Virus record (IMG/VR): IMGVR_UViG_3300031669_000001
Coordinates: 186,001-250,000 of that record
Length of the DNA: 64,000 bases
Strand: one strand, 5' to 3'
Shown: positions 16,917-58,354 of the stretch, in pieces
Numbering within the stretch: position 1 is the first letter of the stretch
Layout of the letters: every line of letters starts with the position of its first letter
The notes under the pieces: model-generated
Seen by the model: the letters and a program-made list of their open reading frames with translations, nothing else
What the model was told of the DNA's origin: nothing
Databases searched by the model: none
Position numbers and translations under genes: made by a program

Positions 16917-16992
16917 TGGTCGCCCTGGAGGGATTCGAACCCTCGATCGCGATTTTAGAGATCGCAGCTTTACCGCTAAGCATTACAAGGCG
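16917..16992 (-). tRNA. amber suppressor tRNA (anticodon CTA)
   Basis: Acceptor CGCCTTG/CAGGGCG-A-CCA, anticodon arm GCGAT-CTCTAAA-ATCGC, T arm GAGGG-TTCGAAT-CCCTC. Confidence 0.88.
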
Positions 16993-35256: not shown

Positions 35257-35329
35257 GGGAACCCTCGAGAGGAGTTGAACCTCACCTACCAAGCTTCGGA
35301 GGCCTGACGCTAGTTCCGCTAGCGAGGGT
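35257..35329 (-). tRNA. tRNA-Arg(CCG), paralogue of the previous tRNA
   Basis: ACCCTCG/CGAGGGT, loop CTCCGAA. Confidence 0.7.
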
Positions 35330-36128: not shown

Positions 36129-36135
36129 GAAAGCA

Positions 36136-36369
36136 TTACAATGGATTCTTTATGACGAAATCGAGGAAATCGCCTCTTTCAAGAGATGCCATGAAATCGA
36201 GATAAGCCTGAGACTACTTAACATCGTTCAAACTGTCTTCAGTCTCGAACAAGTGCAGCGCTGAAATCTCTAGGACTCTTTTCTTCACGTCAGCCATCGC
36301 TTTTGCTTCCAGAGAGTGATTAACTTCTGTGCTTGCGACTTGCTTTAATTGCGAGTTAATGACTTCCAT
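36136..36369 (-). CDS. small protein of 51 aa; in-frame TAG (36214-36216) then a 25-aa open extension
   Basis: SD AGGAG; MEVINSQ...NDVK*SQAYLDFMASLERGDFLDFVIKNPL. Confidence 0.55.
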
Positions 36370-36393
36370 GATGGTGATCTCCTATGTTATGTT

Positions 36394-36468
36394 TGGTGCA
36401 ATATGTTGGAATCGAACCAACCTTCCTGCAGTGTAGGTGCAGACGACAGCCACTCTCTTCAATATTGC
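36394..36468 (-). tRNA. tRNA-Val(TAC), C33
   Basis: CTGCA-CCTACAC-TGCAG, CCA. Confidence 0.75.
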
Positions 36469-36471
36469 GTG

Positions 36472-37196: not shown

Positions 37197-37201
37197 GTTG
37201 A

Positions 37202-37276
37202 TGGTGCTCTGTGCTGGATTCGAACCAACTTCCACTTACTTACAAGGCAAGGCTTCACCGTCAAAGTTTACAGAGC
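37202..37276 (-). tRNA. tRNA-Thr(TGT)
   Basis: Cloverleaf, loop CTTGTAA, CCA. Confidence 0.85.
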
Positions 37277-37280
37277 ATCC

Positions 37281-37356
37281 AGGGGTGTCCAGACGGTTTC
37301 GAACCGTCACTACTCACTTCACAGGCGAGGGTGCAGACCACTACACTATGGACACC
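37281..37356 (-). tRNA. tRNA-His(GTG) with encoded G-1
   Basis: Loop CTGTGAA, C73. Confidence 0.85.
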
Positions 37357-37364
37357 ATTGATCT

Positions 37365-37472
37365 TACCCAAAGTAGGATTTGAACCTACATCTCCCCTTT
37401 TCTGTCTTCACGTGGTTTCCCATGCTCGCAAAGCTCTTACATAGAGTGCTCTACCATTGAAGCTATTCAGGT
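37365..37472 (-). ncRNA. tRNA-like RNA with an about 40-nt expanded anticodon region
   Basis: Acceptor ACCTGAA/TTTGGGT, canonical D arm and T arm, no CCA. Confidence 0.6.
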
Positions 37473-37545
37473 GGTGCTCCCACGAGGAATCGAACCTCGG
37501 ACTCTTGATTACGAAACAAGCATAAGACCACTTTACTATAGGAGC
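37472..37545 (-). tRNA. tRNA-Thr(CGT)
   Basis: Loop TTCGTAA, CCA. Confidence 0.85.
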
Positions 37546-37668
37546 AAATAACGAGACTTCCCAGCCCCGGCCTTGAAGGAGTCTGTTGATCAGAACTTAC
37601 TAAGCTCTAGTCTGGATGGACATTACGGAGCTGTTGGGTTTCAACGGGGAATTCTAGGCGTATCCCAT

Positions 37669-37742
37669 AGGAGCAGGTAACGGGAATCGAACCCGTGACT
37701 AAACATTGGCAATGTTTGATGATACCACTTCACTACACCCGG
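37669..37742 (-). tRNA. tRNA-Gly(GCC)
   Basis: Loop TTGCCAA, U73; 5' end overlaps the neighbouring tRNA. Confidence 0.75.
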
Positions 37743-37814
37743 TGCCCAAGGGGAGAATCGAACTCCCGTTCCATACTTACCAAGTATGAGTAATGACCAT
37801 TATACTACAAGGGC
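37740..37814 (-). tRNA. tRNA-Thr(GGT)
   Basis: Loop TTGGTAA. Confidence 0.85.
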
Positions 37815-37821
37815 TTGCATT

Positions 37822-37901
37822 TGGTGGGTCCCGCCAGATTCGAACTGAGCTCTCTCCCGATTATGAGTCGGACGCTTATACCAGATTTAAGCTTGAGACC
37901 C
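37822..37901 (-). tRNA. tRNA(CAT), Ile2 or Met
   Basis: Loop CTCATAA, CCA. Confidence 0.8.
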
Positions 37902-37974
37902 GGTAACTCCTAACAGAATCGAACTGTTGTGTCTGTCGAGTCAGGACAGTGCTCTACCATTGAGCTAAGGAGTT
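37901..37974 (-). tRNA. tRNA-Val(GAC)
   Basis: Loop CTGACTC. Confidence 0.8.
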
Positions 37975-38178
37975 GAAAAGAGCTACGTTGCAATACAGCG
38001 GTCGGGGAGACCTTGCAATGAAGTAGCTTAAAATTCAATCTTTGATGCGCGGAATGACTTGTGATTCTTTACGAACAGCTTGAACTTACGAGCCTTTCCA
38101 GCGTAAGCTCTCAGTACAACACAACCATGATAAGTGCGAACGGAACCGTATGCTTTCATTTTGGCCTCTTAAAATTAT

Positions 38179-38254
38179 TGGAGTCGCGTGTGGGAATCGA
38201 ACCCGACGTCTACGGTTTTGCAGACCGTTGCATGAACCACTCTACGAACGCGAC
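38179..38254 (-). tRNA. tRNA-Cys(GCA)
   Basis: Loop CTGCAAA, U73, CCA. Confidence 0.85.
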
Positions 38255-38277
38255 TTGGTTGGTGCCCAGTTAGAGCA

Positions 38278-38772
38278 CTATTTCTTTCTTGATACCTTCT
38301 TAACTCCACCGTCTGTGAAGATCAACTTGTGACCTTTTGCAAGGTTACAAGGTTGACACATAGTCTGCATATTGTCAACAGAGTTTGCTCCACCGTGATA
38401 CTTAGGCAGACGATGATCTGCATTCATCAAGATTTCCTTGCCATCTTCGTTGATGGCGTAGAGATTCATGATGACAGGTTTTCCAGGCTCAGCATCGTTA
38501 ATTTCAACAGCGAAGAATGAGCCTTCAATTCCACAACAACGACACTTTGTACCGTGAATCAAGAAAGTTCTCAGCTTGACGTTGTGAACGTTGATCAAGG
38601 TGTTGAACGCTTCCATCTCAACAGAAGGTGAGCTGCTATGAGGGAGTGAATCAATTTCTTTCATCGCGTCCAAGACACCGTCAACAGACAGGATTCCTAA
38701 CCGACGAAAGTTACGATGCTTCGCGACTAAAAAGTCGTCCATGAAAGAAGAGATTTTTGATATGTTCAACAT
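38278..38772 (-). CDS. HNH endonuclease family protein
   Basis: CxCC, DH..P...GG.N...N.Q..C..CN..K; start uncertain. Confidence 0.8.
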   Translation of the reverse strand: MLNISKISSFMDDFLVAKHRNFRRLGILSVDGVLDAMKEIDSLPHSSSPSVEMEAFNTLINVHNVKLRTFLIHGTKCRCCGIEGSFFAVEINDAEPGKPVIMNLYAINEDGKEILMNADHRLPKYHGGANSVDNMQTMCQPCNLAKGHKLIFTDGGVKKVSRKK

Positions 38773-38881
38773 TTGAGTAATTATATCACTGTTCATGTTG
38801 AAAGTAAACACAATTTGGTAGTACTCCACGGTTACGATCCGTGCCGTTGCAGCCCATCTGACCACTCTCCAGAGGATATGT

Positions 38882-38981
38882 TGGTAGTCCCGCTCGGACT
38901 CGAACCGAGAATGTGCGCTAATCTGGCGCCACAGAGTGCCACTTTATAAGGGTGGTGTTTTACCAATTAAACTACAGGACC
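38882..38981 (-). tRNA. tRNA-Ile(TAT) with long variable arm
   Basis: GGTCCTG/CGGGACT, loop CTTATAA, CCA. Confidence 0.8.
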
Positions 38982-39634
38982 AGTAATTCTATAAATTCTT
39001 CATTGATTAAGTCATTTGAAAGAACAACCACTTTGATGTTGTTCATTTTCATTGCAGATTTAATCTTTCGTTCATCTTTCTTGATCAGATAATCATTTTT
39101 TGGATCAAGAAAGATGTTTTGTTTTGGTAAATAAAAGTCTGGTATATATCTTCGTTTCTTACCGTTATCGTTCCAAATATATCCTTGTCGAACTTTAATC
39201 CACTCAATATTAAGTGAGTCTAAAATTTCAGCAACTCTAACCTCGTATGAAGACTCCAAAATTACTCCAGGCTTATACTCGACGTTCTTAGAATACTTTG
39301 AATGTTTTGTTAACCGTTTGCAAGCAATGATTGAAAGTTTTTCCTTCGTTTCTTCACAATGTGGATGGGAAAATATATAACCCTCTTTTTCCATTTGCCT
39401 TTTTCTTTCATTTCCCCTTGCGCCTGCTATTCTTTGCTGTTCTGGATTATGAGATCTACTTTTATGACCAGCGCATCCTTGAGATGACGAAAATTCCTTA
39501 GAGCAAATTTCACATACCCATTTTGTTTTCTTCTCTACTTGTCCCTTACATACAGCAACATGCTTGTTAAAATTAGGAACACTAATTTGCCGAGAACATT
39601 TAGGGCAATCTTTTTTCTGTTTAGAACCGTGCAT
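38972..39634 (-). CDS. putative homing endonuclease (C2H2 zinc fingers + PD-(D/E)xK)
   Basis: CPKC..H...C, CEIC...H....H, SSYE, YIPDF, DPKNDY. Confidence 0.75.
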   Translation of the reverse strand: MHGSKQKKDCPKCSRQISVPNFNKHVAVCKGQVEKKTKWVCEICSKEFSSSQGCAGHKSRSHNPEQQRIAGARGNERKRQMEKEGYIFSHPHCEETKEKLSIIACKRLTKHSKYSKNVEYKPGVILESSYEVRVAEILDSLNIEWIKVRQGYIWNDNGKKRRYIPDFYLPKQNIFLDPKNDYLIKKDERKIKSAMKMNNIKVVVLSNDLINEEFIELLVL

Positions 39635-39902
39635 AATACAAAGATCCCGCCGCTCACCAAAGCTGAGTACTAACGTTATTTCTTCTGCGCATTTTCTCGA
39701 GATTGTCGTAAAGCATTAAATCTCGGAAAAGTATTAATGCTGGAACTGGAAGATTTCAGCGTTTCATTCAATAACGCGTTCTCTTCCTCTCGTGTGAAAG
39801 GTTTACCTTTCATATATGCTTCTTCTTTAGTTGTGAATTTCATTGGGTAATCTCCTTAAAGATGAATAATATCATCCTTTTTGAGATAAGTACATTATTC
39901 TC

Positions 39903-39978
39903 TGGTCCCTCCCCGCGGGATCGAACCGCATCCTCTGGATTTTCAGTCCAGCGTACACACCAGTTATACGAAAGAGGG
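39903..39978 (-). tRNA. tRNA-Phe(GAA)
   Basis: Loop CTGAAAA, CCA. Confidence 0.85.
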
Positions 39979-39982
39979 ATGT

Positions 39983-40058
39983 TGGCAGGAGGTGTGAGAA
40001 TCGAACTCGACTAACCTTGCTTCAAAGGCAAGTATGCATACCATTGCATATACCTCCA
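39983..40058 (-). tRNA. tRNA-Gln(TTG)
   Basis: Loop CTTTGAA, G73, CCA. Confidence 0.75.
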
Positions 40059-40247
40059 ACATTCATTTGTGTTCTGGTCGTAACTCCAGCAGCTGATATT
40101 AGCCTCAATCTCCTGTTCCACGCTTCCAGCTTGCAAACCTTTCACGCTTCGACCTCAGAGGCACATGCCATGTTCTATAACGCTTCATTCGCGACTTCCA
40201 CGTTACGTCAGCCAGACATTCGATAACTTGCACTTGCTACACAAATT

Positions 40248-40321
40248 TGGCAGCCCCCGCTGGAATCGAACCAGCGTCTTCGGAGTCAGAGTCCGACACC
40301 CTACCATTAGACCAGGGGGCA
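40248..40321 (-). tRNA. tRNA-Gln(CTG)
   Basis: Loop CTCTGAC, CCA. Confidence 0.85.
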
Positions 40322-40330
40322 ATTGTTGTG

Positions 40331-40399
40331 CGGCCCAGGAAGGAGTCGAACCCTCTGCAGTCTGACTCAAAATCAAACGCGTATCCGATACACCAGGCA
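40331..40399 (-). tRNA. tRNA-Gln(TTG), miniature D arm
   Basis: Loop TTTTGAG, T arm intact, no CCA. Confidence 0.6.
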
Positions 40400-40430
40400 A
40401 TCTGGAGTTTTTGAAACTCCAGTTTAAAAC

Positions 40431-41195
40431 TTAACTTCTTAAATCCGCCATTAACTCTTCAAGTTCTTGAAGAGTCAAGTTCAACGGGGTTTTACCCGTC
40501 GTTTCAATCCATGACTTATCCACTATAGCGTACACTTCATCTGTGTACCTTGAGAAGAATTCCCAAGTCATCTTGTACTTTTTACCCCAAGATACGCAAG
40601 TAGGTCCTTGATCGTCATAAGCAATCAAGATGATAGCGTGACCACCTTCTGTAGCAGCAAGGTTAGGATCTTGACTCACCGTCCAAACTTGAGGAGGTTC
40701 ACCTGCCGCAAACATACTATTTGGGACGTTGAAGCCGATGTAAGCTAGACCGAATTCTGCGATAGTAAGCTTCACATCGTTGATGTTATTGTGATCGACT
40801 TCCATGAAGCCTAAGATCTTGTCACGAGTTCCATCACCTAACGGAATTCCTTCATTCAACAGGTACTGTAAAACGTACTGCTCAACTCCGCCTTGATCAG
40901 TTGCAGGATTCTGTGGGTTGTAACCTGTAGCAGCCTCGTAAAGATTCAAGACGCATCTGTCAGGTTCTGTTTGCTCTGTCAGCGTGTTAGCTGTCCAGAT
41001 CTGTCTTGCATGATAGACCGCAGCGCAGGTGCAATCTCCCAATCTATCATTGAGCATAACACCAAAGTCTGTGATGTTGTGCGACCAGTCAATAGCGGCT
41101 GGTGGGGTCGGTAGCGGTTTACCGTAAACTGCCCGCATATTTTTTATTTTAGGATTGAACGCTCTTGCCTGACGGCCGAGTTTCATCTTCATCAT
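40431..41195 (-). CDS. papain-fold cysteine peptidase-like protein
   Basis: GDCTCAA, GGHA.....YD, SWG; late promoter upstream. Confidence 0.75.
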   Translation of the reverse strand: MMKMKLGRQARAFNPKIKNMRAVYGKPLPTPPAAIDWSHNITDFGVMLNDRLGDCTCAAVYHARQIWTANTLTEQTEPDRCVLNLYEAATGYNPQNPATDQGGVEQYVLQYLLNEGIPLGDGTRDKILGFMEVDHNNINDVKLTIAEFGLAYIGFNVPNSMFAAGEPPQVWTVSQDPNLAATEGGHAIILIAYDDQGPTCVSWGKKYKMTWEFFSRYTDEVYAIVDKSWIETTGKTPLNLTLQELEELMADLRS

Positions 41196-41245
41196 AATAC
41201 CTCCTTGAAAGATTACTGGAGATATTTATGGACAAACTTGTATGG

Positions 41246-41316
41246 TAGCAGAGAATAAAACGTCGATGGGTATGGTTTCATTGTGAGCGAAGTAACCCGT
41301 GACTGCGCAGCTGCTA
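41246..41316 (-). ncRNA. Y-RNA-like handle family, copy 1 (minimal)
   Basis: TAGCA-GCTGCG...GTTACTTCG...TTATTCTC-TGCTA. Confidence 0.7.
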
Positions 41317-41390
41317 TGGTCCTTTCTGCAAGAATCGGACTTGCATCTATCGATTATCGGTCGATTGCTCTACCACTGAGCTAAGAAAGG
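41317..41390 (-). tRNA. tRNA-Ile(GAT), C33
   Basis: Loop CCGATAA, CCA. Confidence 0.8.
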
Positions 41391-41535
41391 ATTTGATCCT
41401 TGGCATCTTCTAAACCTTTGAAGAAGGCTTCGTTTGTGCCAGTGAATTCTATTCGTATAACTTTCATCTTCAAAACTTCCTGAAGGTACTTATCTTATAT
41501 CGAACCGCTTCTTTCGTGTTATGCTAAATGTACAG

Positions 41536-41612
41536 TGGGGTGAGCGACGGGAATTGAACCCGCTCTAAAAGCTTCACAGGCTTCGTTGCTGAACCATTAC
41601 AATACGCCCACC
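41536..41612 (-). tRNA. tRNA-His(GTG)
   Basis: Loop CTGTGAA, G-1, CCCA. Confidence 0.85.
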
Positions 41613-41630
41613 CCGATGTACACTTTAATT

Positions 41631-41704
41631 TGGTAGTCCCGGTCGGAATCGAACCGACGTGTTTCGCTAATCGGGCGAACACCTTACCATTAGATGACAG
41701 GACT
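41631..41704 (-). tRNA. tRNA-Ile(GAT), C33/U37
   Basis: Loop CCGATTA, CCA. Confidence 0.75.
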
Positions 41705-41716
41705 ACAACGATTGAA

Positions 41717-41787
41717 CGACATACGGGGAATCGAACCCGCGATCTCCGGCGTGAAGGCCAGGGTTTTGTCCGTTAAACTACACATCT
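41717..41787 (-). tRNA. Glu-like tRNA with a 6-nt anticodon loop (CTTCAC), no CCA
   Basis: D and T arms intact; stem CTGGC/GCCGG. Confidence 0.5.
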
Positions 41788-41870
41788 CAGATCTTTTTTC
41801 AAAACTTGCTGGAATCGATTAAAATCTGTCAATCGTGATCATATCCACGGCAGCAACCGCTTCAATAATT

Positions 41871-41945
41871 TGGCCGATTCGGTTGGATTTTCACCAACAC
41901 CTTCCCACCTTGTAGTGGGCCCTCTAAGAATTGAACTACGAATCG
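41871..41945 (-). tRNA. atypical tRNA of undetermined anticodon
   Basis: CGATTCG/CGAATCG-G-CCA; CCCAC-TACAAG-GTGGG; T loop TGAAAAT. Confidence 0.5.
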
Positions 41946-41949
41946 ATTA

Positions 41950-42025
41950 TGGTGGGTACCGTGGGATTCGAACCCACATCTTACGGATTAAGAGTCCGCC
42001 GTAATAGCCATTATACTAGATACCC
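41950..42025 (-). tRNA. tRNA-Lys(CTT)
   Basis: Loop CTCTTAA, CCA. Confidence 0.88.
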
Positions 42026-42122
42026 AAATAAGATCGTGTGGATTCGAACCACCACCGCGCTTAGAGCAGCACTCATCACGCTCTTATGGATTTTACCGGG
42101 AGCCATACCGGAAGTACGATCT

Positions 42123-42199
42123 TGGTCGGAATGGAGGGATTCGAACTCTCGACATCTTGCTCCCAAAGCAAGCGCACTACCAGGCTGTGCTACATTCCG
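42123..42199 (-). tRNA. tRNA-Pro(TGG)
   Basis: Loop TTTGGGA, CCA. Confidence 0.9.
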
Positions 42200-42267
42200 A
42201 TGTGCAACTCTCATCTAAGGTTGAATCATCCTGTCACCAGACCTGACCAATCCGAAAAGTTGTTGCA

Positions 42268-42342
42268 TGGTACACCCAACCGGATTCGAACCGGTATTTC
42301 CTGATTGAGGGTCAAGCGACCTAGCCGTTAGTCGATGAGTGT
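42268..42342 (-). tRNA. tRNA-Glu(CTC), C33
   Basis: Loop CCCTCAA, CCA. Confidence 0.8.
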
Positions 42343-42361
42343 AAAGTGTTTCTCATTATAG

Positions 42362-42420
42362 TCAATTCCTTTTGTTTGAATCGATAAAAGCATTATAACA
42401 CGATCTACAGAAAAGTACAC
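42362..42420 (-). repeat. about 60-bp early promoter/SD cassette, near-identical at 48379-48438 and partial at 46881-46919
   Basis: Shared GTTTGAATCGATAAAAGCATTATAACA.GATCTACAGAAAAGTACAC. Confidence 0.85.
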
Positions 42421-42540
42421 AACTATTTAAGTGAAAACGAAATTATTTTTGATAAACTCTGCAGTCGAATCTTCATTCGTGTACAACTTGAACTCGTTAG
42501 CGCCCATGTTGAAGTTCAATGTATCACCTAGTGTACATTT

Positions 42541-42618
42541 TGGTCAGGATGGTCGGATTCGAACCGACGGTCTCTCACTTCCGAGGCGAGTGGATTAGCC
42601 AGACTTTCCCACACCCTG
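42541..42618 (-). tRNA. tRNA-Pro(CGG)
   Basis: Loop CTCGGAA, CCA. Confidence 0.85.
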
Positions 42619-42620
42619 AT

Positions 42621-42742
42621 TGGTGGACATCACGAGAATCGAACTCGCTATCTTCAGGCGAAGCATATACCAAAGTTTACACTCATCCAGAGACCCCCAT
42701 TTGGTGGAGATTACGGGAATCGAACCCGCATACCTGATGCCC
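42621..42742 (-). ncRNA. two tandem tRNA-Ala-like pieces with swapped acceptor strands
   Basis: Two T arms and two ACCA ends; GGGCATC pairs 7/7 with the distal GATGTCC. Confidence 0.6.
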
Positions 42743-42744
42743 AT

Positions 42745-42819
42745 TGGTGGAGGCCGAGGGAGTTGAACCCTTCTAGACAAGATACTTGCAAGGCATCTCC
42801 GCAGCCCGCTGCTGCCCCC
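42745..42819 (-). tRNA. tRNA-Ala(TGC), atypical D arm
   Basis: G3:U70, loop CTTGCAA, CCA. Confidence 0.75.
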
Positions 42820-42829
42820 ATGAAACAAG

Positions 42830-42902
42830 TCCGATGTCCTAAGCCACTATGACGACCTCCAGCATTACCCGCTAGGCCGGGATTCGAACCCGGGTTTTCG
42901 GA
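42830..42902 (-). ncRNA. circularly permuted tRNA mimic
   Basis: TCCGA-T arm-closed acceptor-D arm-TCGGA. Confidence 0.7.
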
Positions 42903-42978
42903 AGGTGGAGGATGGGAGGTTCGAACTCCCGACCTATAGCTTGCAAAGCTACCGCTCTCCCAGCTGAGCTAATCCCCC
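42903..42978 (-). tRNA. tRNA-Ala(TGC)
   Basis: G3:U70, loop TTTGCAA. Confidence 0.9.
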
Positions 42979-42983
42979 ATCGT

Positions 42984-43051
42984 GACGGTGCTTTCCCACT
43001 AAGCTACTACCGATTTCTCAGTAGACAGGATTTGAACCATGTGTCTCCGCC
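42984..43051 (-). ncRNA. circularly permuted tRNA mimic
   Basis: GGCGG-T arm-CTACTGA GAAA TCGGTAG-TA-D arm-CCGTC. Confidence 0.75.
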
Positions 43052-43125
43052 GGTGCCCCCACACGGAATCGAACCGCGGTATCCTGATTACAAAACAGGT
43101 GTAATGACCATTATACGACAGGGGC
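43051..43125 (-). tRNA. tRNA-Thr(TGT)
   Basis: Loop TTTGTAA. Confidence 0.85.
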
Positions 43126-43131
43126 TTTATT

Positions 43132-43207
43132 TGGTACAGACGATTGGGATCGAACCAATATCCTCGGGGTTTCAAGCCGATACATGAACCATCATTGTTA
43201 CGTCTGC
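43132..43207 (-). tRNA. tRNA-Phe(GAA)
   Basis: Loop TTGAAAC, CCA. Confidence 0.75.
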
Positions 43208-43210
43208 ATT

Positions 43211-43319
43211 AAGTAGAGTAAAAGTTGTTTAGAGCTATTGCCACCTTGGCACCCCTGCTCTTGAAGAGCAGGGGATTAGAATCGAACTAACGAAGTATCT
43301 CTTAACATTGCAACTACTT
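43211..43319 (-). ncRNA. Y-RNA-like handle family, copy 2 (T-acceptor-D module)
   Basis: AAGTA-GTTGCA...GATACTTCG, T loop TTCGATT, 10-bp closed stem, TTTTACTC-TACTT. Confidence 0.75.
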
Positions 43320-43392
43320 GGTGGTGAGTGAAGGTATCGATCCTTCGTCTAAGCCTTATGAGAGCCTTGTTCTACCTTTGAACTAAATCACC
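43319..43392 (-). tRNA. tRNA-Met(CAT)
   Basis: Loop CTCATAA, CCA. Confidence 0.8.
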
Positions 43393-43416
43393 ACGATAGC
43401 TTTACCTATCGGAATA

Positions 43417-43492
43417 CGGTGGGTGCACTCGGTGTCGAACCGAAACTCTTAGGGTAAAAGCCTAATGTGCAGAGCCGCTACACTATACACCC
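43417..43492 (-). tRNA. tRNA-Lys(TTT)
   Basis: Loop CTTTTAC. Confidence 0.82.
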
Positions 43493-43499
43493 AAACTTC

Positions 43500-43591
43500 G
43501 GGTGGGACTGGTGGGATTCGAACCCACGATGTGAGCTTTCGCATGTACCGGATTAAAAGTCCGGTGTCTTCAACCTCTTGACTACAGACCC
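43500..43591 (-). tRNA. tRNA-Lys(TTT) with long variable arm
   Basis: Loop CTTTTAA, about 20-nt variable region. Confidence 0.78.
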
Positions 43592-43681
43592 ATTAAACAG
43601 CTTTGGAATCAGAGGTTGATTTACCAAAGCCATGGGTAGAAAATCGTTCCATGGCACATACTCCTTTTGTTGAAATTAAAT

Positions 43682-43756
43682 TGGTCCGCCCACGTGGAAT
43701 CGAACCACGGACCGGAGTTTAGAAGACTCCTGTTATATCCACTTAACTATGGGCAG
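43682..43756 (-). tRNA. tRNA-Arg(TCT)
   Basis: Loop CTTCTAA, CCA; 5' end overlaps the endonuclease stop codon. Confidence 0.88.
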
Positions 43757-44379
43757 AAACATTTTCTTCCTTTTGACCACCCTTGATCTAGGTAAGTCTG
43801 AAGAATATCTTTCTTGATCTTGATGGTTTTCTGTTGCTTTTCTGAGAAGATCCAGCAAGATCCAAATTGAGAGTTTCTATCACCGGATTGAGCAGATCTC
43901 ATTTTAGCTTTCGTATCTTCAGAGTGAGTCTTTCCGAACATCGGATTAGAGTCTGCTGAATTCAAATCGCTTAATTTTGCTCTTGATTCATATGAATGAG
44001 ATTTCCCTTGGAATTTTCCCTTGCCCATATTTGATTTTCTTGCAGCATTACTTGCATTGGACTCTATGCAGAACCCATTTCTTCTAATCTTTGTGATGTA
44101 TTCAAATCCACCGGTGCCGCCTCTTCTGAGGTTGTAGACATCATCACGAGAAAGAAACTCATCACTAACAATTTCTTTCTCCCTCGCATACATAGCTTCC
44201 GAATTCTCGAAAGTCTCAAGTATGACTTTTTCAAAGTTTTCGATCCCGTATCTTTTGATAGCACGACCGATAACTTTTCCAGAGCCCATGTACCCATCAT
44301 CAAAATTCTTGGTCTTATGAACTCCAACGTAGATTTTTCCATTCACCATGTTGGTGATTTGATAGATGCAATATTTCAT
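43747..44379 (-). CDS. GIY-YIG homing endonuclease (Seg-like) with NUMOD3 repeats
   Basis: CIY.ITN..NGKIYVG, YMGSG, YNL..GG.GG, GK.HS repeats. Confidence 0.9.
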   Translation of the reverse strand: MKYCIYQITNMVNGKIYVGVHKTKNFDDGYMGSGKVIGRAIKRYGIENFEKVILETFENSEAMYAREKEIVSDEFLSRDDVYNLRRGGTGGFEYITKIRRNGFCIESNASNAARKSNMGKGKFQGKSHSYESRAKLSDLNSADSNPMFGKTHSEDTKAKMRSAQSGDRNSQFGSCWIFSEKQQKTIKIKKDILQTYLDQGWSKGRKCFCP

Positions 44380-44408
44380 GCTTCTATTTATGGAGAATCC
44401 ACAACGTG

Positions 44409-44477
44409 TTGCGAACCCGGAATCGAACCGGCCTGATGGGTTATGAGCCCAACATGCGCCACTACATCTTTATCGCG
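44409..44477 (-). tRNA. initiator-like tRNA(CAT), atypical, no CCA
   Basis: C1xA72 mismatch, GGG/CCC anticodon stem. Confidence 0.6.
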
Positions 44478-44550
44478 GTCTCTCCGGCTGGACTCGAACC
44501 AGCATCGTCTGCGTTCCAAACACAGTGAACAACCTTTATCCCACAGAGAG
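44476..44550 (-). tRNA. tRNA-Pro(TGG)
   Basis: Loop TTTGGAA. Confidence 0.8.
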
Positions 44551-44565
44551 AAGGGTACTACTAAT

Positions 44566-44643
44566 TGGCCCTGTTGAATGGGTTCACACCATTATCACGC
44601 CGCCTAGGTGGCAGCTAGCATTGTAGTTTATGCTTACAACAGG
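44566..44643 (-). tRNA. atypical tRNA, nominally Arg(CCT), A33
   Basis: CCTGTTG/CAACAGG-G-CCA, loop CACCTAG, T loop TGTGAAC. Confidence 0.55.
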
Positions 44644-44647
44644 ATTG

Positions 44648-44723
44648 TGGCGTTCGCGGAGGGGATTGAACCCTCTTCTGGAGATTGAAAGTCTCCTGTC
44701 CTAACCATGTAGACGACGCGAAC
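44648..44723 (-). tRNA. tRNA-Glu(TTC)
   Basis: Loop CTTTCAA, CCA. Confidence 0.87.
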
Positions 44724-44918
44724 ATGAATGTAGCCTAAGCACCGACAGATAGGTTGCGATCCTACCCTGTTGCTCGAGTATGACACTGTCGTGGCATTCT
44801 CTTCTTCACAAGAGACCTCAGTTGTGACTTACGATCTCTTGATCATCTACATTGAGACTTCGTTACACTCGTACACCGAGCAATGACCGACGAGATAAAC
44901 TCGACGATCACCGAAGTC

Positions 44919-44992
44919 TGGCGGGCCAGAGGGGTGTCGAACCCCCGCGTGAAAATAGACAGTTTTCCATACTACCGTTATATGACTGACCC
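44919..44992 (-). tRNA. tRNA-Asp(GTC)
   Basis: Loop CTGTCTA, G73, CCA. Confidence 0.83.
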
Positions 44993-45046
44993 GTGGGATG
45001 CTTCAATTTTTATAGACGCGGAAGCAAAGGTCGCGCCATTGTTTGG

Positions 45047-45131
45047 AGTCAGAGAAGATGTCGGCAAGAGTGACTGGGCGATGCCCAAGTTTTCCATAAA
45101 CGAAGTAACTCTCATTCCTATGCAACTGACT
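45047..45131 (-). ncRNA. Y-RNA-like handle family, copy 3 (single hairpin payload)
   Basis: AGTCA-GTTGCATAG...GTTACTTCG...TCTTCTC-TGACT. Confidence 0.72.
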
Positions 45132-45206
45132 TGGTACACCTGCAGGGAATCGAACCCTGTATTCCAGCTTGAAGGGCTGGCCACTCAACCAATTGTATTC
45201 AGGTGT
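45132..45206 (-). tRNA. tRNA-Glu(TTC), C33
   Basis: Loop CCTTCAA, CCA. Confidence 0.8.
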
Positions 45207-45209
45207 GCA

Positions 45210-45284
45210 AGGCTCCCCAGGCTGGATTCGAACCAACGACCAAGTGATTAACAGTCACCTACTCTACCACTGAGCTACTAGGGA
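45210..45284 (-). tRNA. tRNA-Asn(GTT)
   Basis: Loop CTGTTAA; overlaps the endonuclease stop codon. Confidence 0.88.
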
Positions 45285-45880
45285 ATTGTTACAAAATCTT
45301 TTGCTATTTGAATCCACTGTTTTGGATCTTTGTACATCTTTTGCCATTCTATTCTAAGTACTTTCCATCCAAAATCTTTCAAAAATTTATCTTTTCGTTC
45401 ATCACGTTCTCGATATTCTTGAAATCGTTTGTGTTGTTCACCGTCGATCTCAATGCAGAGACTTTTATGAACCCAGGCAAAGTCAAGAGAGAAGTTGCCT
45501 AAGGAATATTCGCGAACATAATTTTTATCTTCAAACTCGTTTTCGATAACTTTCATGAAAAACTTTTCTGGATAACTTGGCATGTTGTTCCACCGAGATT
45601 TACCAATATTCCAAGCTCGTCCTTCAGAATGAGCTTTCTTCATTGATTCGCTTGTTAGCTGTTTAGTTTTGGAAGAAGGAATATGACCAGGTTTTCCCTT
45701 AAGTGCGATAGAAATTTTATTGGACATCTTCCAGATTCTTGGATCAGATTTATTCAAACCTTTAGTCCAAGAATCTTTACCAGCAAAGGGTTTATGATCT
45801 TTACCAGAACCGTGTGTTCTCCAAATATGAGTTCCAATACCCATTTTAGAAAATTCTTTATCGCAAAATGTACATTTCAT
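45278..45880 (-). CDS. putative homing endonuclease (zinc finger + DUF559/Vsr-like domain)
   Basis: CxxC..H....H, S.PE, DFAW, IEIDG.QH, RD..KD, GW.VLR; start set to MKCTFC. Confidence 0.8.
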   Translation of the reverse strand: MKCTFCDKEFSKMGIGTHIWRTHGSGKDHKPFAGKDSWTKGLNKSDPRIWKMSNKISIALKGKPGHIPSSKTKQLTSESMKKAHSEGRAWNIGKSRWNNMPSYPEKFFMKVIENEFEDKNYVREYSLGNFSLDFAWVHKSLCIEIDGEQHKRFQEYRERDERKDKFLKDFGWKVLRIEWQKMYKDPKQWIQIAKDFVTIP

Positions 45881-45917
45881 GTTGAATTGTAACACAGTTG
45901 AGAAAATAAGAACATTA

Positions 45918-46011
45918 TGGCTCCCCCAGCAGGATTCGAACCTGCATACCGTTCGCGACGGACTACGAGTGGTTAACAGCCACTTCACTTGCCAGTTATG
46001 TGTACGGGGGA
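45918..46011 (-). tRNA. tRNA-Asn(GTT) with long variable arm
   Basis: Loop CTGTTAA, variable hairpin CCGT/ACGG, CCA. Confidence 0.8.
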
Positions 46012-46016
46012 ATGTT

Positions 46017-46091
46017 TGGCGGTGTTCAGAGGAGTTGAACCTCAATCAAAAGGCCTCGGTGGCCTCCGTGCTAACGTTACACTAAAACACC
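46017..46091 (-). tRNA. tRNA-Arg(CCG), A33
   Basis: Loop CACCGAG, CCA. Confidence 0.65.
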
Positions 46092-46093
46092 AT

Positions 46094-46168
46094 GGGACCC
46101 CCGCACTGGAATCGAACCAGTATCTAAACGTTCGTAGCGTTTCGTCGTGTCCATTGGACTAACGGGAG
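46094..46168 (-). tRNA. tRNA-Arg(ACG)
   Basis: Loop CTACGAA. Confidence 0.85.
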
Positions 46169-46170
46169 TT

Positions 46171-46246
46171 TGGTGCACGGTGAAGGACTCGAACCTTCAT
46201 AATCAATCTTGTAAGGATTGCGGCTGACCTCTCACACCAACCGTGC
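46171..46246 (-). tRNA. tRNA-Val(TAC)
   Basis: Loop CTTACAA, CCA. Confidence 0.82.
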
Positions 46247-54568: not shown

Positions 54569-54640
54569 CGGTAGCAGCAGGTGGAGTCGAACCACCGGAG
54601 ATAGGCTTATGAGACCTATTTGAATCCCATTCTCACTGCA
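54569..54640 (-). tRNA. tRNA(CAT), miniature D arm
   Basis: Loop CTCATAA, T arm intact. Confidence 0.6.
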
Positions 54641-54641
54641 A

Positions 54642-54766
54642 CATTGATGAGAAAAAGTTGATAGAGGCTTTTTGTGGCGGCTGTCCTACCACTGGACGAC
54701 TAGTCAGGAATCGAACCTGAGTTCGCTGCTTTGGGCGAAGTAACTCTTATCTACGCAACATCAATG
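54642..54766 (-). ncRNA. Y-RNA-like handle family, copy 5 (T arm then D arm)
   Basis: CATTGAT-GTTGCGTAG...GTTACTTCG, TCAGG-TTCGATT-CCTGA, GTCC-AGTGGTA-GGAC, TTTTTCTC-ATCAATG. Confidence 0.78.
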
Positions 54767-54916
54767 GTGCCATACAATCAGAGTCAACCAACTGCATGAC
54801 ATTTCAGCATTTTACCGGAGCTACCCGGCTTTCCTTCGAGGATCTTTAATACCGCCCTTTCGGGTGATGGTACAAGAATTGCTGAACCCCTAGTGGAAGT
54901 GCCCTTCCACACCGTT

Positions 54917-54990
54917 TGGAGCGGGTAGAGGGAATCGAACCCTCCACTGAACCTTGGCAAGGTTCCGAGTTACCACTACACCACACCCGC
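54917..54990 (-). tRNA. tRNA-Gly(GCC)
   Basis: Loop TTGCCAA, CCA. Confidence 0.88.
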
Positions 54991-55105
54991 TAGATGAACA
55001 TTCAAAGAATGTCATCCGTCTCCACCATCTAATGATCAGCTCCACTAGAAGAGTTACCACCTAAGGTACCATCCAATGATCGGCTCCATTGGAAGAGTTA
55101 TAAGT

Positions 55106-55236
55106 TGAATCGAGAAAGAGGCGAAAAGAGAGATTTTAGGGTTTTGCCATTAAACTATACCCACTAGGGGCAGCCGGAATCGAACCGACGTCACTCGTTT
55201 AAGAGACGAAGTAACTCTTTTCTGTGCAACGATTCA
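55106..55236 (-). ncRNA. Y-RNA-like handle family, copy 6 (T-acceptor-D module)
   Basis: GTCGG-TTCGATT-CCGGC, TGCCC/GGGTA, TA, GTTT-AATGGCA-AAAC inside the handle. Confidence 0.8.
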
Positions 55237-55311
55237 GGTGCGGGATGAGAGAATCGAACTCTACTATTCCTGGGTGGAAGCCAGGCGTGTAACCAATGAC
55301 ACCTATCACGC
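55236..55311 (-). tRNA. tRNA-Gly(TCC)
   Basis: Loop CTTCCAC. Confidence 0.75.
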
Positions 55312-55316
55312 AAAGG

Positions 55317-55402
55317 GATGGAGAAAAAGTCGGTAAGGGAGACTGGCCGAAGCCAAGGTTAACAAAAAGTAAACGAAGTAGCCCTAATCCTATGCAACCA
55401 TC
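55317..55402 (-). ncRNA. Y-RNA-like handle family, copy 7
   Basis: GATG-GTTGCATAG...GCTACTTCG...TTTTTCTC-CATC. Confidence 0.72.
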
Positions 55403-55403
55403 T

Positions 55404-55477
55404 TGGAGCGGGTGAAGAGAATCGAACTCTCGTCATAAGTTTGGAAAACTTCAGCTCTACCATTGAGCTACACCCGC
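55404..55477 (-). tRNA. tRNA-Gly(TCC)
   Basis: Loop TTTCCAA, CCA. Confidence 0.88.
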
Positions 55478-55579: not shown

Positions 55580-56167
55580 TTAAGTTTTTCTACTTGTATT
55601 CGCATTCATAATCCATTGATAGTTGAAGTCAAAGTCATCTTGATCTCCGACTGTAGCCATCTCTCCACTAGGAAGAAACTTCCCGATAACGAGAACATCA
55701 CCAGCATCTACCTTGTTCAAGAGACGGTACAGTCTCTTGTTTGCGCCAGACGCATTAGCGTAATCACCTTCAACCTGACCATAAAGGTCGGCATTATACT
55801 TTTCAGAGATGAATTTTGCAACAGCTGCAGAACGACTTACCCCTGCATGACAATGAACTATAACCCGCTCACACGTTATCCTATTCAAAAAATCTATGAT
55901 TGCTTTTGCATGATTTGCATCAGGCAGGCGTAGGTTGTGCCACAGAACTGGACCATCAGGGTCAGCGTCAGGGACGGCACCCAAAGGTTCATGAATAGTT
56001 TCTTCTTCCAGATCATCAAAGCTCAGCCTTAGGATCGAGAAAAAGCCATCATTTATCAAGGCTTTAGGATCTCCAGGGGAAGTAATTGAGATTATAGCGG
56101 TGTCAGAGCGTACAACTTCTCGATGTTCCATCCAACGCTGACTAACGAATTTAACGGTTTTGATCAT
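55580..56167 (-). CDS. protein tyrosine/dual-specificity phosphatase family
   Basis: VHCHAGVSRS (CX5R), F.D. Confidence 0.88.
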   Translation of the reverse strand: MIKTVKFVSQRWMEHREVVRSDTAIISITSPGDPKALINDGFFSILRLSFDDLEEETIHEPLGAVPDADPDGPVLWHNLRLPDANHAKAIIDFLNRITCERVIVHCHAGVSRSAAVAKFISEKYNADLYGQVEGDYANASGANKRLYRLLNKVDAGDVLVIGKFLPSGEMATVGDQDDFDFNYQWIMNANTSRKT

Positions 56168-56290
56168 AAGGCATTGTAACACAAACAATCAAGAAAGTAA
56201 AATAAACTTAGGAGAGGTGTTATCCTCTCCTAATATGGTACTATGTCTAAGAGGCTTCAGGCTACCCGTGAGCATCCTGAAGCACGTAGA

Positions 56291-57116: not shown

Positions 57117-57596
57117 TTATTCTCCTTTGGTTTGAAAATCGTCTGTTAAGTTGCAAGATTGCGGGTGAAGACAATGACCTACATCGCTACAGCATTCACA
57201 GACTGTTAGCTCATCGATTTGGTCTTGTAAAAATTTCTTGCGATTGTCTATGTCTGCAAGTTCAGCTTTAAAATTTGCAAGCTTCTCTTTTCGTTCTTCA
57301 CGTTCCTCTTCAGCTTTTTTCAGCTGTTTTTCAAGAGCGTAACGTTCGTTGATAAGTCTGATGATCTCTGTTTCGCGAGGATGACTGCGAATGATCGTGC
57401 AACCATCAGAATGCTCGATCAAGTTGATGTCTTTGATCTCAAATCCATCTCCAAATTCTTCAGCACTTCGCATATCATCGAGACAATCAGTGATGAGAGC
57501 TTCCTCAGTGTCATAACGTCTCTTGATTTCCCACGATTGACCGCAGCAAGAACAACGATAGCCGTTGTCACCACGAGCTATTAGCTGTATGCTCAT
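57117..57596 (-). CDS. hypothetical protein
   Basis: SD, Cys motifs, coiled coil. Confidence 0.7.
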   Translation of the reverse strand: MSIQLIARGDNGYRCSCCGQSWEIKRRYDTEEALITDCLDDMRSAEEFGDGFEIKDINLIEHSDGCTIIRSHPRETEIIRLINERYALEKQLKKAEEEREERKEKLANFKAELADIDNRKKFLQDQIDELTVCECCSDVGHCLHPQSCNLTDDFQTKGE

Positions 57597-57970
57597 TTTG
57601 ATTCTCCTTTAGTTGATTTGAAAAGACGATACTTTTTGAAGTGATGACGATGCTCTTGTGTAATCGGGAGAGTCGCAAGGGCTGTGTGGCTTGGGGAATA
57701 GCCAAGGTTATCGTCAGGCTCGTAGAAGAGCGCGCAGTCGATACCTAAGGTAGTTACGTGTTGGTAAGCTTTGAGAAGGTGTTCTTCGCTGTTAGCTTCG
57801 AGAAGAACGAGTGAAGTTGTCTCGTCAAACGTTGTGCCGGCGTGGCCAGCCTTGAGACCTGCTTCGAATGTTGCGTGAGCCGCCTGAACGATCTGCTGTT
57901 CGAGGGGTAGATCCTTGCGGATGAAGGTGTAGCAGTACGACTTTGGTTGAACCTACAGAGCTGCTTTCAT
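57593..57970 (-). CDS. Pth2-like peptidyl-tRNA hydrolase with in-frame TAG at codon 6 (57953-57955); not in ORF track
   Basis: MKAAL*VQPKSYCYTFIRKDLPLEQQIVQAAHA...LVLLEA.SEE.L...FYEPD...TALAT.P...FKKYRLF; alternative in-frame start at 58102. Confidence 0.75.
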
Positions 57971-58354
57971 GATGCTTCCTTTCAGTTTGTTGCGGGATTG
58001 ATAAACTGCTTTGCGATAATCTTTCAGCTTTTTCTCAATGAGAGCTTGATCGTAGATACCACGAACGATTCCTTCTTCTCTTTTGTTTTCAGCTTTGATC
58101 ATTTCGCCTTATTTATAAAATTTCAGAGGATTCATTATAACATAAACACCCAGAAAGTAAACTGTTTTAATCAAAAAGTTGAGCAACAGTCAGCTACAAC
58201 TTTACACAATTTTGTTCAACTGGAAGAGTCATGTCACCATTTTCCAGTTGATAGGCAAGAACTTCAAGGACGCTGGCCTCGTAAGTCAAACCCACAAGAG
58301 TCAATTCAACGGCGAATTCAGTTGCCTTCTTCGCGATTTCTACAGCGCCTTTTG

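What the first reader, a model, noticed from the sequence alone, without database searches (positions are those of the whole stretch)
57593..58102. Unannotated Pth2-like hydrolase reachable only through an amber codon
Seen: 119 sense codons with Pth2-like motifs (IRKDL, QAAHA, EPD, TALA) follow TAG 57953-57955 and have no in-frame ATG, GTG or TTG of their own. In-frame starts lie upstream at 57970 (SD AAGGAAG, 5 codons before TAG) and 58102 (behind both an early and a late promoter). The stop overlaps the next gene's ATG, as in intact operons here. Inference: expression depends on the CUA tRNA or on RF1 failure.
Basis: partly seen in the sequence, partly recalled or inferred. Interest (0 to 1): 0.8.

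Follow-up and report, generated by a model that had tools for sequence, protein, structure and literature searches.

The report
Amber-gated Pth2-like hydrolase in jumbo phages
A small phage gene for a peptidyl-tRNA-hydrolase-like enzyme carries a deliberately kept UAG stop codon just after its start, so it is probably made only when the phage's own stop-reading (suppressor) tRNA is active; the same design is found in about 90 related large phages and gives their puzzling suppressor tRNAs a first conserved target.

Summary
On the minus strand, SD-ATG (57970) plus four codons runs into TAG 57953-57955. After it come 119 sense codons with no ATG/GTG/TTG, ending in a TGA that overlaps the next gene's ATG.

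The 119-codon piece is a Pth2-fold protein: Pfam PTH2 scores above its cut-off, the AlphaFold model has pLDDT 90, and the top Foldseek matches are archaeal and human Pth2.

The TAG is neither an accident nor an error. Of 114 distinct homologues from phage genomes and metagenomes:
- 87 have SD-ATG, 0-12 codons, then TAG directly before the domain.
- 4 have TAA there, and none has TGA.
- 23 have an ordinary or ambiguous start.

The post-TAG frame is under purifying selection (dN/dS 0.03-0.24). A tRNA with anticodon CUA lies on the same strand within 10 kb in 27 of 33 TAG-bearing loci with long flanks. In this window it is at 16917-16992. Other TAG codons in the window behave as normal stops.

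Best reading: programmed amber readthrough ties production of the hydrolase to suppressor-tRNA activity. Why the two are coupled remains inference. GenBank records omit or truncate this gene, and no paper found links it to the suppressor tRNAs.

The parts
57975..57981 (-). Shine-Dalgarno-like AAGGAAG, 4 nt upstream of the leader ATG
   Evidence: Read directly. An SD-like motif precedes the leader ATG in 35 of 39 TAG-bearing homologues.
57956..57970 (-). Five-codon leader (ATG AAA GCA GCT CTG; MKAAL)
   Evidence: The same leader is present in relative L014. Leaders of ATG plus 0-12 codons occur across the family, most often one extra codon.
57953..57955 (-). In-frame amber codon TAG, followed by G: the proposed readthrough site
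   Evidence: TAG is kept at the equivalent place in 87 of 114 distinct homologues. The next base is A in 22, G in 15, C in 2 and T in 0.
57596..57952 (-). 119-codon Pth2-fold domain with no canonical start codon of its own
   Evidence: Pfam PTH2 27.7 bits against a cut-off of 23. AF2 model pLDDT 90.4. Foldseek top matches are Pth2 structures 2zv3, 1wn2, 3erj, 1q7s and 1xty. dN/dS 0.12-0.16 against L014, L085 and L025.
57593..57595 (-). TGA stop of the Pth2-like gene, overlapping ATG 57596 of the next ORF (ATGA)
16917..16992 (-). Phage tRNA with anticodon CUA (class I, A73, CCA encoded): the presumed decoder of the TAG
   Evidence: ARAGORN. Rfam tRNA model 44 bits with an ordinary cloverleaf. 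A homologous tRNA-CUA in phage CBB lies 3.7 kb from its Pth2-like gene.
58110..58117 (-). T4-type late-promoter motif TATAAATA upstream of the locus
   Evidence: 5 matches, all on the minus strand, 1.2 expected. This is motif-level evidence only.
58134..58161 (-). Sigma-70-like promoter TTTACT-16-TATAAT with a TG extension
   Evidence: 10 of 12 positions match. This is motif-level evidence only.
57956..58102 (-). 49-codon in-frame upstream ORF ending at the same TAG; probably not a conserved gene
   Evidence: No Pfam or PHROG hit. No tblastn hit in any related locus. The frame is closed by TAA in L014.

Best explanation
The locus is an intact, recoded gene.

Proposed mechanism:
1. Ribosomes start at ATG 57970 and make a five-residue leader.
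2. They meet UAG as codon 6.
3. The phage's own tRNA(CUA), at 16917-16992, competes with RF1 and inserts an amino acid.
4. Translation then continues through 119 codons to give a 125-residue protein with the Pth2 (peptidyl-tRNA hydrolase 2) fold.

The UAG is a conserved device, not damage. It makes synthesis of the hydrolase depend on, and scale with, the activity of the suppressor tRNA.

Because the UAG sits at the very start, a failed attempt costs only a short peptide, and the identity of the inserted residue does not matter for the fold.

What is shown: conservation of the stop, selection on the downstream frame, the fold, and genomic linkage to tRNA-CUA genes.

What is inferred: that readthrough actually occurs, and the purpose of the coupling. 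My preferred purpose is that the hydrolase works on the suppressor tRNA or on products of suppression, either as a negative-feedback governor or for clean-up. The next option is that the UAG acts as a timer reporting that the phage tRNA pool is made and charged.
For: Conservation of the stop:
- TAG at the same place, after SD-ATG plus 1-2 codons, in Ralstonia phage RsoM2USA, Cronobacter phage GAP32 and Salmonella phage Arash.
- The same in Acinetobacter phage ME3, Xanthomonas phage XacN1 and a 595-kb uncultured phage.
- The same in IMG/VR, metagenome and MAG contigs. Totals are 87 TAG, 4 TAA, 0 TGA and 23 ordinary or ambiguous starts among 114 distinct sequences.
- On the family tree, TAG occupies all major clades on both sides of the midpoint root.
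- Synonymous divergence between TAG-bearing pairs is at or near saturation (dS 1.3-1.5 or not computable), yet TAG is kept.

Selection on the downstream frame: dN/dS is 0.03-0.24.

Linkage to tRNA-CUA:
- The tRNA is on the same strand in all 120 instances.
- It lies within 10 kb in 27 of 33 TAG loci with long flanks, against 3 of 11 normal-start loci (naive Fisher p 0.0017).
- The window has its own copy.
- The published papers on RsoM2USA and XacN1 report CUA suppressor tRNAs with no known target (PMC8504454, PMC5852040).

Specificity: control ORFs show no excess of TAG, and other TAG codons in the window act as plain stops.

Context: a purine follows TAG in 37 of 39 cases. From my own knowledge, that favours amber suppression in E. 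coli.

Fold.
Against: - There is no direct evidence of readthrough, of the inserted amino acid, or of enzymatic activity.
- Six TAG-bearing loci with long flanks show no tRNA-CUA within 10 kb. One of them is this window, where the tRNA is 41 kb away. In L027 the syntenic slot holds a tRNA-Arg(CCG).
- Four lineages have TAA, which a CUA anticodon should not read, and no tRNA was found in their flanks.
- The association test is not corrected for shared ancestry. The independent-pairs test had only two supported pairs and no power.
- The family lacks the two-residue 'GK' loop that carries the canonical Pth2 lysine, so its chemistry may differ from peptidyl-tRNA hydrolysis.
- Nine homologues with an ordinary start also sit next to a tRNA-CUA. 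Gating therefore cannot be the whole story.
Confidence: 0.8

Rival explanations
1. RF1 sensor without the suppressor. The early UAG is read through by near-cognate host tRNAs only when RF1 activity is low. The hydrolase is then induced by poor termination, using prfB-like logic, and the tRNA-CUA is incidental.
For: An early in-frame stop in a translation-related gene recalls prfB. Four lineages carry TAA. Some TAG loci lack a nearby tRNA-CUA.
Against: tRNA-CUA genes are linked on the same strand in most loci, often in 2-3 copies within 1-4 kb. TGA is the leakiest stop for near-cognate readthrough (my own knowledge) and never occurs. No stimulatory RNA structure follows the TAG (z +0.93).
Confidence: 0.08
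2. Leader peptide plus reinitiation. The short ORF ending in TAG is a regulatory upstream ORF. The hydrolase is started separately at a non-canonical codon just after the TAG, with no readthrough.
For: ATT, a weak start codon, directly follows TAG in 8 of 39 homologues. L067 has ATG right after TAG, XacN1 has an ATG five codons after it, and L132 has a GTG just after its TAG.
Against: In most homologues the codons after TAG are GTT, AAC, AAT, GTA, ACC, CTA or AAG, none of which is a usable start. In the window the first near-start codon is ATC at codon 11, next to the invariant Arg, and starting there would remove the conserved first strand. The leader ATG is always in frame with the domain, which reinitiation does not require.
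Confidence: 0.05
3. Dead gene or error. The TAG is a recent nonsense mutation or a sequencing or assembly artefact, and the ORF is a decaying pseudogene.
For: A single in-frame stop and no start codon are what a fresh pseudogene looks like. GenBank annotators skipped or truncated the gene.
Against: Independent assemblies (L014, L085) show the same TAG with different neighbouring substitutions. 87 distinct homologues share it. No other stops or frameshifts interrupt the 105-140-codon frame. dN/dS is 0.03-0.24.
Confidence: 0.02
4. Genome-wide reassignment of TAG to a sense codon (code 15), as in some crAss-like and Lak phages. On this reading the gene is ordinary under another code.
For: A source gene caller translated the TAG of relatives as Q. 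P0001 reads MKAAL-Q-VQPK, but the DNA has TAG. The phage encodes a tRNA-CUA.
Against: The Pth2-like gene is the only coding-looking segment in the 64-kb window that follows a TAG without a start. ORFs ending in TAG are followed by short open stretches like those after TAA and TGA: median 7 codons, maximum 41. Across 1.97 Mb of loci, non-Pth2 'leader-stop' cases show no TAG excess. The XacN1 authors found nothing beyond 18 TAG stops (PMC5852040).
Confidence: 0.02

Closest known systems
Archaeal/eukaryotic peptidyl-tRNA hydrolase 2 (Pth2, PF01981; e.g. M. jannaschii 2zv3, S. solfataricus 1xty, human PTRH2/Bit1 1q7s)
   Same: Same fold (TM 0.65-0.75, probability 1.0). It shares the RxDL and Q..HA motifs, and the Asp aligned with the canonical 'DAG' Asp. 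It scores above the Pfam cut-off. [quoted passage not shown]
   Different: It is a phage-specific subfamily: only 6 MAG contigs were found among 185,579 species genomes. It lacks the 'GK' loop with the canonical lysine and has its own invariant Glu78 and Arg102. Canonical Pth2 genes are not known, to me or in the library searched, to carry an in-frame stop.
prfB (RF2) autoregulation through an early in-frame UGA
   Same: A translation-termination-related gene carries an early in-frame stop codon, and how often that stop is passed sets the output of the gene.
   Different: prfB needs a +1 frameshift, and its product reads that very stop.
Stop-codon recoding with suppressor tRNAs in crAss-like, Lak and other huge phages (code 15 or 4)
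   Same: A phage-encoded tRNA-CUA gives meaning to UAG during infection, and recoding is thought to time expression.
   Different: In those phages many, mostly late, genes hold many in-frame TAGs. Here the code is standard and a single small gene carries one TAG at codon 2-13. In two related loci a second gene does the same.
Lambda bar minigenes and the pth(rap) phenotype
   Same: Two- to few-codon ORFs ending in a stop are classic sources of peptidyl-tRNA drop-off, which is the substrate of peptidyl-tRNA hydrolase (my own knowledge). The leader here is such a minigene, and it sits in front of a hydrolase gene.
   Different: The bar minigenes are stand-alone and toxic in Pth-poor hosts. Here the minigene is fused in frame to the hydrolase, and nothing about drop-off was tested.
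Classical viral leaky-stop genes (Q-beta A1 protein, MuLV gag-pol)
   Same: One in-frame stop is passed at a set frequency to yield a longer product.
   Different: Those use host near-cognate tRNAs, place the stop after a complete functional protein, and often use RNA structures. Here the pre-stop product is a 1-13-residue peptide, the virus supplies a cognate suppressor, and no structure is predicted.

Membership tests
Pth2 (PF01981) | Sequence match to the family profile above the curated cut-off | tested here: met
   27.7 bits against 23, E 3.5e-6, profile positions 5-105 of 115. A profile of 20 members hits PDB Pth2 chains 24bt and 2zv3.
Pth2 (PF01981) | Pth2 alpha/beta fold | tested here: met
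   AF2 model pLDDT 90.4, pTM 0.84. The top 15 Foldseek PDB hits are Pth2 structures, apart from the structural-genomics entries 1rlk (Ta0108) and 2gax (Atu0240), which are deposited as proteins of unknown function. TM 0.57-0.75.
Pth2 (PF01981) | Catalytic Asp of the 'DAG' segment (Asp86 in S. solfataricus Pth2; the residue role is from my own knowledge) | tested here: met
   Asp80 (in EPD) aligns with the D of 'KDAG' or 'RDAG' in 24bt and 2zv3. It is invariant in 39 sequences.
Pth2 (PF01981) | Catalytic Lys in the 'GK' loop after RxDL (Lys18 in S. solfataricus Pth2; the residue role is from my own knowledge) | tested here: not met
   The family has a two-residue deletion at this loop and Gln where the PDB chains have Lys (alignment). 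There is no conserved Lys nearby.
Pth2 (PF01981) | Hydrolysis of peptidyl-tRNA, or complementation of pth(ts) | not testable with these tools
   Needs an enzyme assay or genetics.
Programmed stop-codon readthrough gene served by a cognate suppressor tRNA | In-frame stop conserved among homologues at the same place | tested here: met
   87 TAG plus 4 TAA of 114 distinct homologues, 8-18 codons before the invariant Arg.
Programmed stop-codon readthrough gene served by a cognate suppressor tRNA | Coding constraint on the frame behind the stop | tested here: met
   dN/dS 0.03-0.24 in nine pairs. Two more pairs were saturated at synonymous sites.
Programmed stop-codon readthrough gene served by a cognate suppressor tRNA | Cognate suppressor tRNA encoded by the same genome | tested here: met
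   Window tRNA-CUA at 16917-16992. tRNA-CUA within 10 kb in 27 of 33 long-flank TAG loci.
Programmed stop-codon readthrough gene served by a cognate suppressor tRNA | Full-length readthrough protein observed | not testable with these tools
   Needs proteomics or a reporter assay.
Genome-wide TAG reassignment (code 15) | Many conserved genes with in-frame TAG; TAG not used as a terminator | tested here: not met
prfB-type autoregulatory recoding | Frameshift at the early stop | tested here: not met
   Leader ATG and domain are in the same frame in every case.
prfB-type autoregulatory recoding | The product acts on decoding of its own stop codon | not testable with these tools
   Hypothesis only.
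Pyrrolysine system (ARAGORN labels the tRNA 'Pyl') | tRNA-Pyl architecture: 6-bp anticodon stem, 3-nt variable loop, shortened D-loop (my own knowledge) | tested here: not met
   The Rfam tRNA alignment shows a standard 5-bp anticodon stem, a 5-nt variable loop and a normal D-arm. The 'Pyl' label only reflects the CUA anticodon.

The most novel reading that the evidence does not exclude
The Pth2-like protein and the tRNA-CUA genes form one self-regulating module. On this reading the hydrolase acts on the suppressor tRNA itself: on its aminoacyl or peptidyl form, or on ribosomes holding it at UAG. Its own leader UAG then closes a feedback loop that sets how UAG is decoded in the infected cell. 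That would be a virus-encoded governor, or even a surrogate, of amber termination. The tight linkage of tRNA-CUA to homologues that have no TAG, and a second TAG-gated gene in some phages, fit a small suppressor-controlled regulon.
Probability: 0.25. Interest if true: 0.92.

Novelty: new variant of a known kind. Interest (0 to 1): 0.85.

Why it matters
Large tRNA-rich phages that use the standard code have repeatedly been reported to carry amber suppressor tRNAs with no known purpose. The XacN1 paper states that no target gene could be found (PMC5852040), and the RsoM2USA paper only speculates (PMC8504454).

A conserved one-codon target, sitting in a gene of the tRNA-recycling fold and usually next to the suppressor, gives that question a concrete and testable answer. 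The test could be done in cultured phages of Cronobacter, Pectobacterium, Acinetobacter, Salmonella and Ralstonia.

It also has practical value for annotation:
- The gene is missing or truncated in GenBank records.
- It is split into a 77-position 'unknown function' PHROG.
- Some gene callers translate its TAG as Q.

Finally, it would be a compact natural example of a tRNA-gated translational switch.

Tried and rejected
- **Close DNA relatives.** megablast and blastn of the region against 50,697 phage records found none, only tRNA matches.
- **Second start-less segment after a TAG (9599-9826).** It is not coding: the frame upstream is full of stops.
- **Upstream 49-codon ORF as a conserved gene or fusion partner.** It has no homologue.
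- **Conserved protein partner.** Neighbouring ORFs are shared only with the closest relatives. The downstream 159-aa ORF gives weak partial hits only.
- **Amino-acid identity of the tRNA-CUA from similarity to other phage tRNAs.** There is no clear parent: best identities are 0.67-0.72, spread over many types. The tRNA-Arg(CCG) in the syntenic slot of L027 is unrelated.
- **RNA structure that might stimulate readthrough.** None was found (z +0.93).
- **CTAG or another DNA motif as the conserved element.** Only 14 of 39 sites form CTAG.
- **Phylogenetically independent test of TAG against tRNA-CUA.** There were too few independent contrasts.
- **Relatives of the second TAG-gated ORF.** The scan found only the query itself.
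- **Structure prediction.** I did not resend those.
- **Literature.** Eight full-text searches found no paper linking the Pth2-like gene to suppressor tRNAs.
- **Canonical catalytic residues of Pth2.** I could not confirm them from a held paper, so they are marked as my own knowledge.
- **Handling of the pieces.** The two pieces of the gene were always searched apart and were never joined.

Full report
**What is in the window.** All features below are on the minus strand.
- A Shine-Dalgarno-like AAGGAAG (57981-57975) precedes ATG 57970.
- Four more codons give the leader MKAAL, and they run into TAG 57955-57953.
- The same frame stays open for 119 codons (57952-57596). It holds no ATG, GTG or TTG.
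- It ends in a TGA that overlaps the ATG of the next ORF.
- A further in-frame ATG at 58102 opens a 49-codon ORF that ends at the same TAG.
- Upstream of that ATG are a sigma-70-like site and a T4-type late motif TATAAATA. All five copies of that motif in the window are on the minus strand, against 1.2 expected.

The window comes from a 345-kb uncultured phage contig. It has 42 tRNA genes, including one with anticodon CUA at 16917-16992. It has no close DNA relative among 50,697 phage records.

**What the 119 codons encode.**
- The piece matches Pfam PTH2 above the curated cut-off.
- An alignment of 39 relatives gives a confident model (pLDDT 90.4).
- The best structural matches are nearly all archaeal and human Pth2 (2zv3, 1wn2, 3erj, 1q7s, 1xty; TM 0.65-0.75).
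- Among viral models the best matches are the XacN1 and RaK2 proteins.
- The family keeps the RxDL and Q..HA motifs and the Asp that aligns with the canonical 'DAG' aspartate.
- It lacks the short 'GK' loop that carries the canonical lysine, and it has its own invariant Glu78 and Arg102.

I therefore call it a divergent Pth2-fold protein of untested activity. It is essentially phage-specific. A scan of one genome from each of 185,579 species found six hits, all on MAG contigs. PHROGs lists the family as 'unknown function', and one of the two matching families is a 77-position stub.

**The stop codon is conserved.** tblastn found 33 phage records with a homologue, and many had no annotated gene under the match. 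Reading the DNA showed the reason. All of the following have an SD, an ATG, one or two codons, then TAG, then the domain:
- RsoM2USA (ML-TAG)
- GAP32 (MAQ-TAG)
- Arash (ML-TAG)
- ME3 (MT-TAG)
- XacN1 (MK-TAG)
- a 595-kb uncultured phage (MTH-TAG)

Annotators either skipped the gene or began it at an internal codon.

Scans of IMG/VR, JGI metagenomes and GTDB genomes, plus contigs recovered through protein hits, raised the census to 114 distinct sequences:
- 87 have TAG.
- 4 have TAA.
- None has TGA.
- 23 have an ordinary or ambiguous start.

Other regularities:
- The leader is ATG plus 0-12 codons, most often one.
- An SD-like motif is present in 35 of 39 cases.
- TAG sits 8-15 codons before the invariant Arg.
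- The next base is a purine in 37 of 39 cases and never T.

One apparent counter-example turned out not to be one. P0001 reads Q at the site, but its DNA has TAG, and the source had translated it under another code.

**It is not chance, decay or a global code change.**
- A control scan of 1.97 Mb for the same architecture gave 56 TAG, 2 TAA and 0 TGA in Pth2-like genes. All other ORFs with an SD gave 5 TAG, 7 TAA and 4 TGA.
- dN/dS of the post-TAG frame is 0.03-0.24 between TAG-bearing pairs. Synonymous sites are often saturated, and still the TAG persists.
- On a tree of 110 sequences, TAG occupies every major clade. Ordinary starts form a few clades and single nested leaves. TAA arose four separate times inside TAG clades.
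- In the window, the Pth2-like gene is the only coding-looking start-less segment behind a TAG.
- TAG-terminated ORFs in the window are followed by short open stretches, like ORFs ending in the other stops.
- No stable RNA structure follows the TAG.

**Link to the suppressor tRNA.**
- ARAGORN finds tRNA-CUA genes near the gene in Arash, CBB, GAP32, ME3 and most metagenomic loci. They usually lie 0.3-4 kb away, often in two or three different copies.
- They are always on the same strand as the gene (120 of 120 instances).
- Among loci with at least 5 kb on both sides, 27 of 33 TAG-bearing genes have a tRNA-CUA within reach, against 3 of 11 genes with ordinary starts. The naive Fisher p is 0.0017.
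- The contrast-based test that allows for shared ancestry had no power.
- One of the six exceptions is this window, where the tRNA lies 41 kb away.
- Published genome papers report CUA suppressors in XacN1 and RsoM2USA. They state or imply that their targets are unknown.
- The Iyer et al. survey notes PTH2 in jumbo phages but draws no link to suppressors.
- Eight searches found no paper that makes the link.

**How it most likely works.**
- *Shown:* the gene can yield its domain only if UAG is decoded, and selection has kept it so.
- *Inferred:* the phage tRNA-CUA is the decoder. Output therefore depends on the amount of processed, charged suppressor relative to RF1.
- *From my own knowledge:* the early position keeps failed products tiny. 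It may also favour the tRNA over RF1, because very short nascent chains terminate poorly and tend to drop off. A purine after UAG favours amber suppression.

*Why the coupling is kept is open.* Nine homologues with ordinary starts still sit beside a tRNA-CUA. For that reason I favour a functional pairing, in which the hydrolase acts on the suppressor tRNA or on by-products of suppression, either as a feedback governor or for clean-up. A timer or 'tRNA pool ready' checkpoint is the main alternative. The amino acid inserted could not be inferred. The site lies outside the folded core, so the choice should not matter.

**Open problems.**
- The four TAA variants have no tRNA in their flanks.
- L027 has a tRNA-Arg(CCG) in the syntenic slot.
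- The missing canonical lysine leaves the chemistry uncertain.
- Nothing here demonstrates readthrough or enzyme activity.

**Verdict.** The parts are of known kinds: a Pth2 fold, an amber suppressor tRNA and stop-codon readthrough. The conserved circuit that joins them in standard-code jumbo phages appears to be undescribed in the literature I could search.

Noticed in passing
L041:11960-12439 (+) and L054:~9569-10027 (+): A second, unrelated 150-157-residue ORF with no Pfam match. It has the same SD-ATG-ACA-TAG leader and lies between the Pth2-like gene and the tRNA-CUA cluster. The suppressor may therefore gate more than one gene in some phages.
   Followed up: partly
L006 and L007:5317-5396; L005:5975-6051 (= L025:12975-13051): ARAGORN calls tRNAs with four-base anticodons. 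One ('ctag') is directly after a tRNA-CUA. Another ('ttgt') is in the window's 74%-identical relative. They could be quadruplet decoders or miscalls.
   Followed up: no
L021 (XacN1 AP018399.1):5446-6303: In XacN1 an MK-TAG leader precedes a 283-codon ORF that joins an unknown ~170-residue N-terminal domain (no Pfam hit) to the Pth2-like domain. The record annotates it from an internal ATG as hypothetical ORF364. The XacN1 paper reports finding no target for that phage's two CUA suppressors.
   Followed up: partly
L092:~4950-4960: ATG is followed directly by TAG (a start-stop) before the domain. This is the shortest possible leader.
   Followed up: no
L015-L017, L078, L098, L112: Four independent lineages have TAA instead of TAG at the site, and no tRNA gene of any kind lies in the fetched flanks. 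Whether an ochre (UUA) suppressor exists elsewhere in those genomes is unknown. tRNAs called 'tta' occur in L042, L052 and L063.
   Followed up: partly
window 35258-46246 and 54570-55477 (minus strand): Dense tRNA arrays, 42 genes in the window. They include unusually long calls (43500-43592 Lys, 45918-46011 Asn; possible introns) and an odd two-base anticodon call at 41716-41789.
   Followed up: no
window 15885-16901 (-): A 338-residue ORF immediately downstream of the tRNA-CUA has a Macro domain (PF01661, 33 bits against a cut-off of 22).
   Followed up: no
window 55580-56188 (-): An ORF with an HCxxGxxRS phosphatase signature. The match to the dual-specificity phosphatase family is below its cut-off (24.8 against 33.5 bits).
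   Followed up: no
window 15794, 37143, 46638, 53214, 58110 (minus strand): Five exact TATAAATA motifs, all on the coding strand, against 1.2 expected. This is consistent with T4-type late promoters in this phage.
   Followed up: partly
L036, L041, L143 and others: Up to three structurally different tRNA-CUA genes sit side by side. Of 84 distinct tRNA-CUA sequences, 40 have G1-C72 with A73, 10 have A1-U72 with G73, and a few have U73. This suggests charging by different synthetases.
   Followed up: partly
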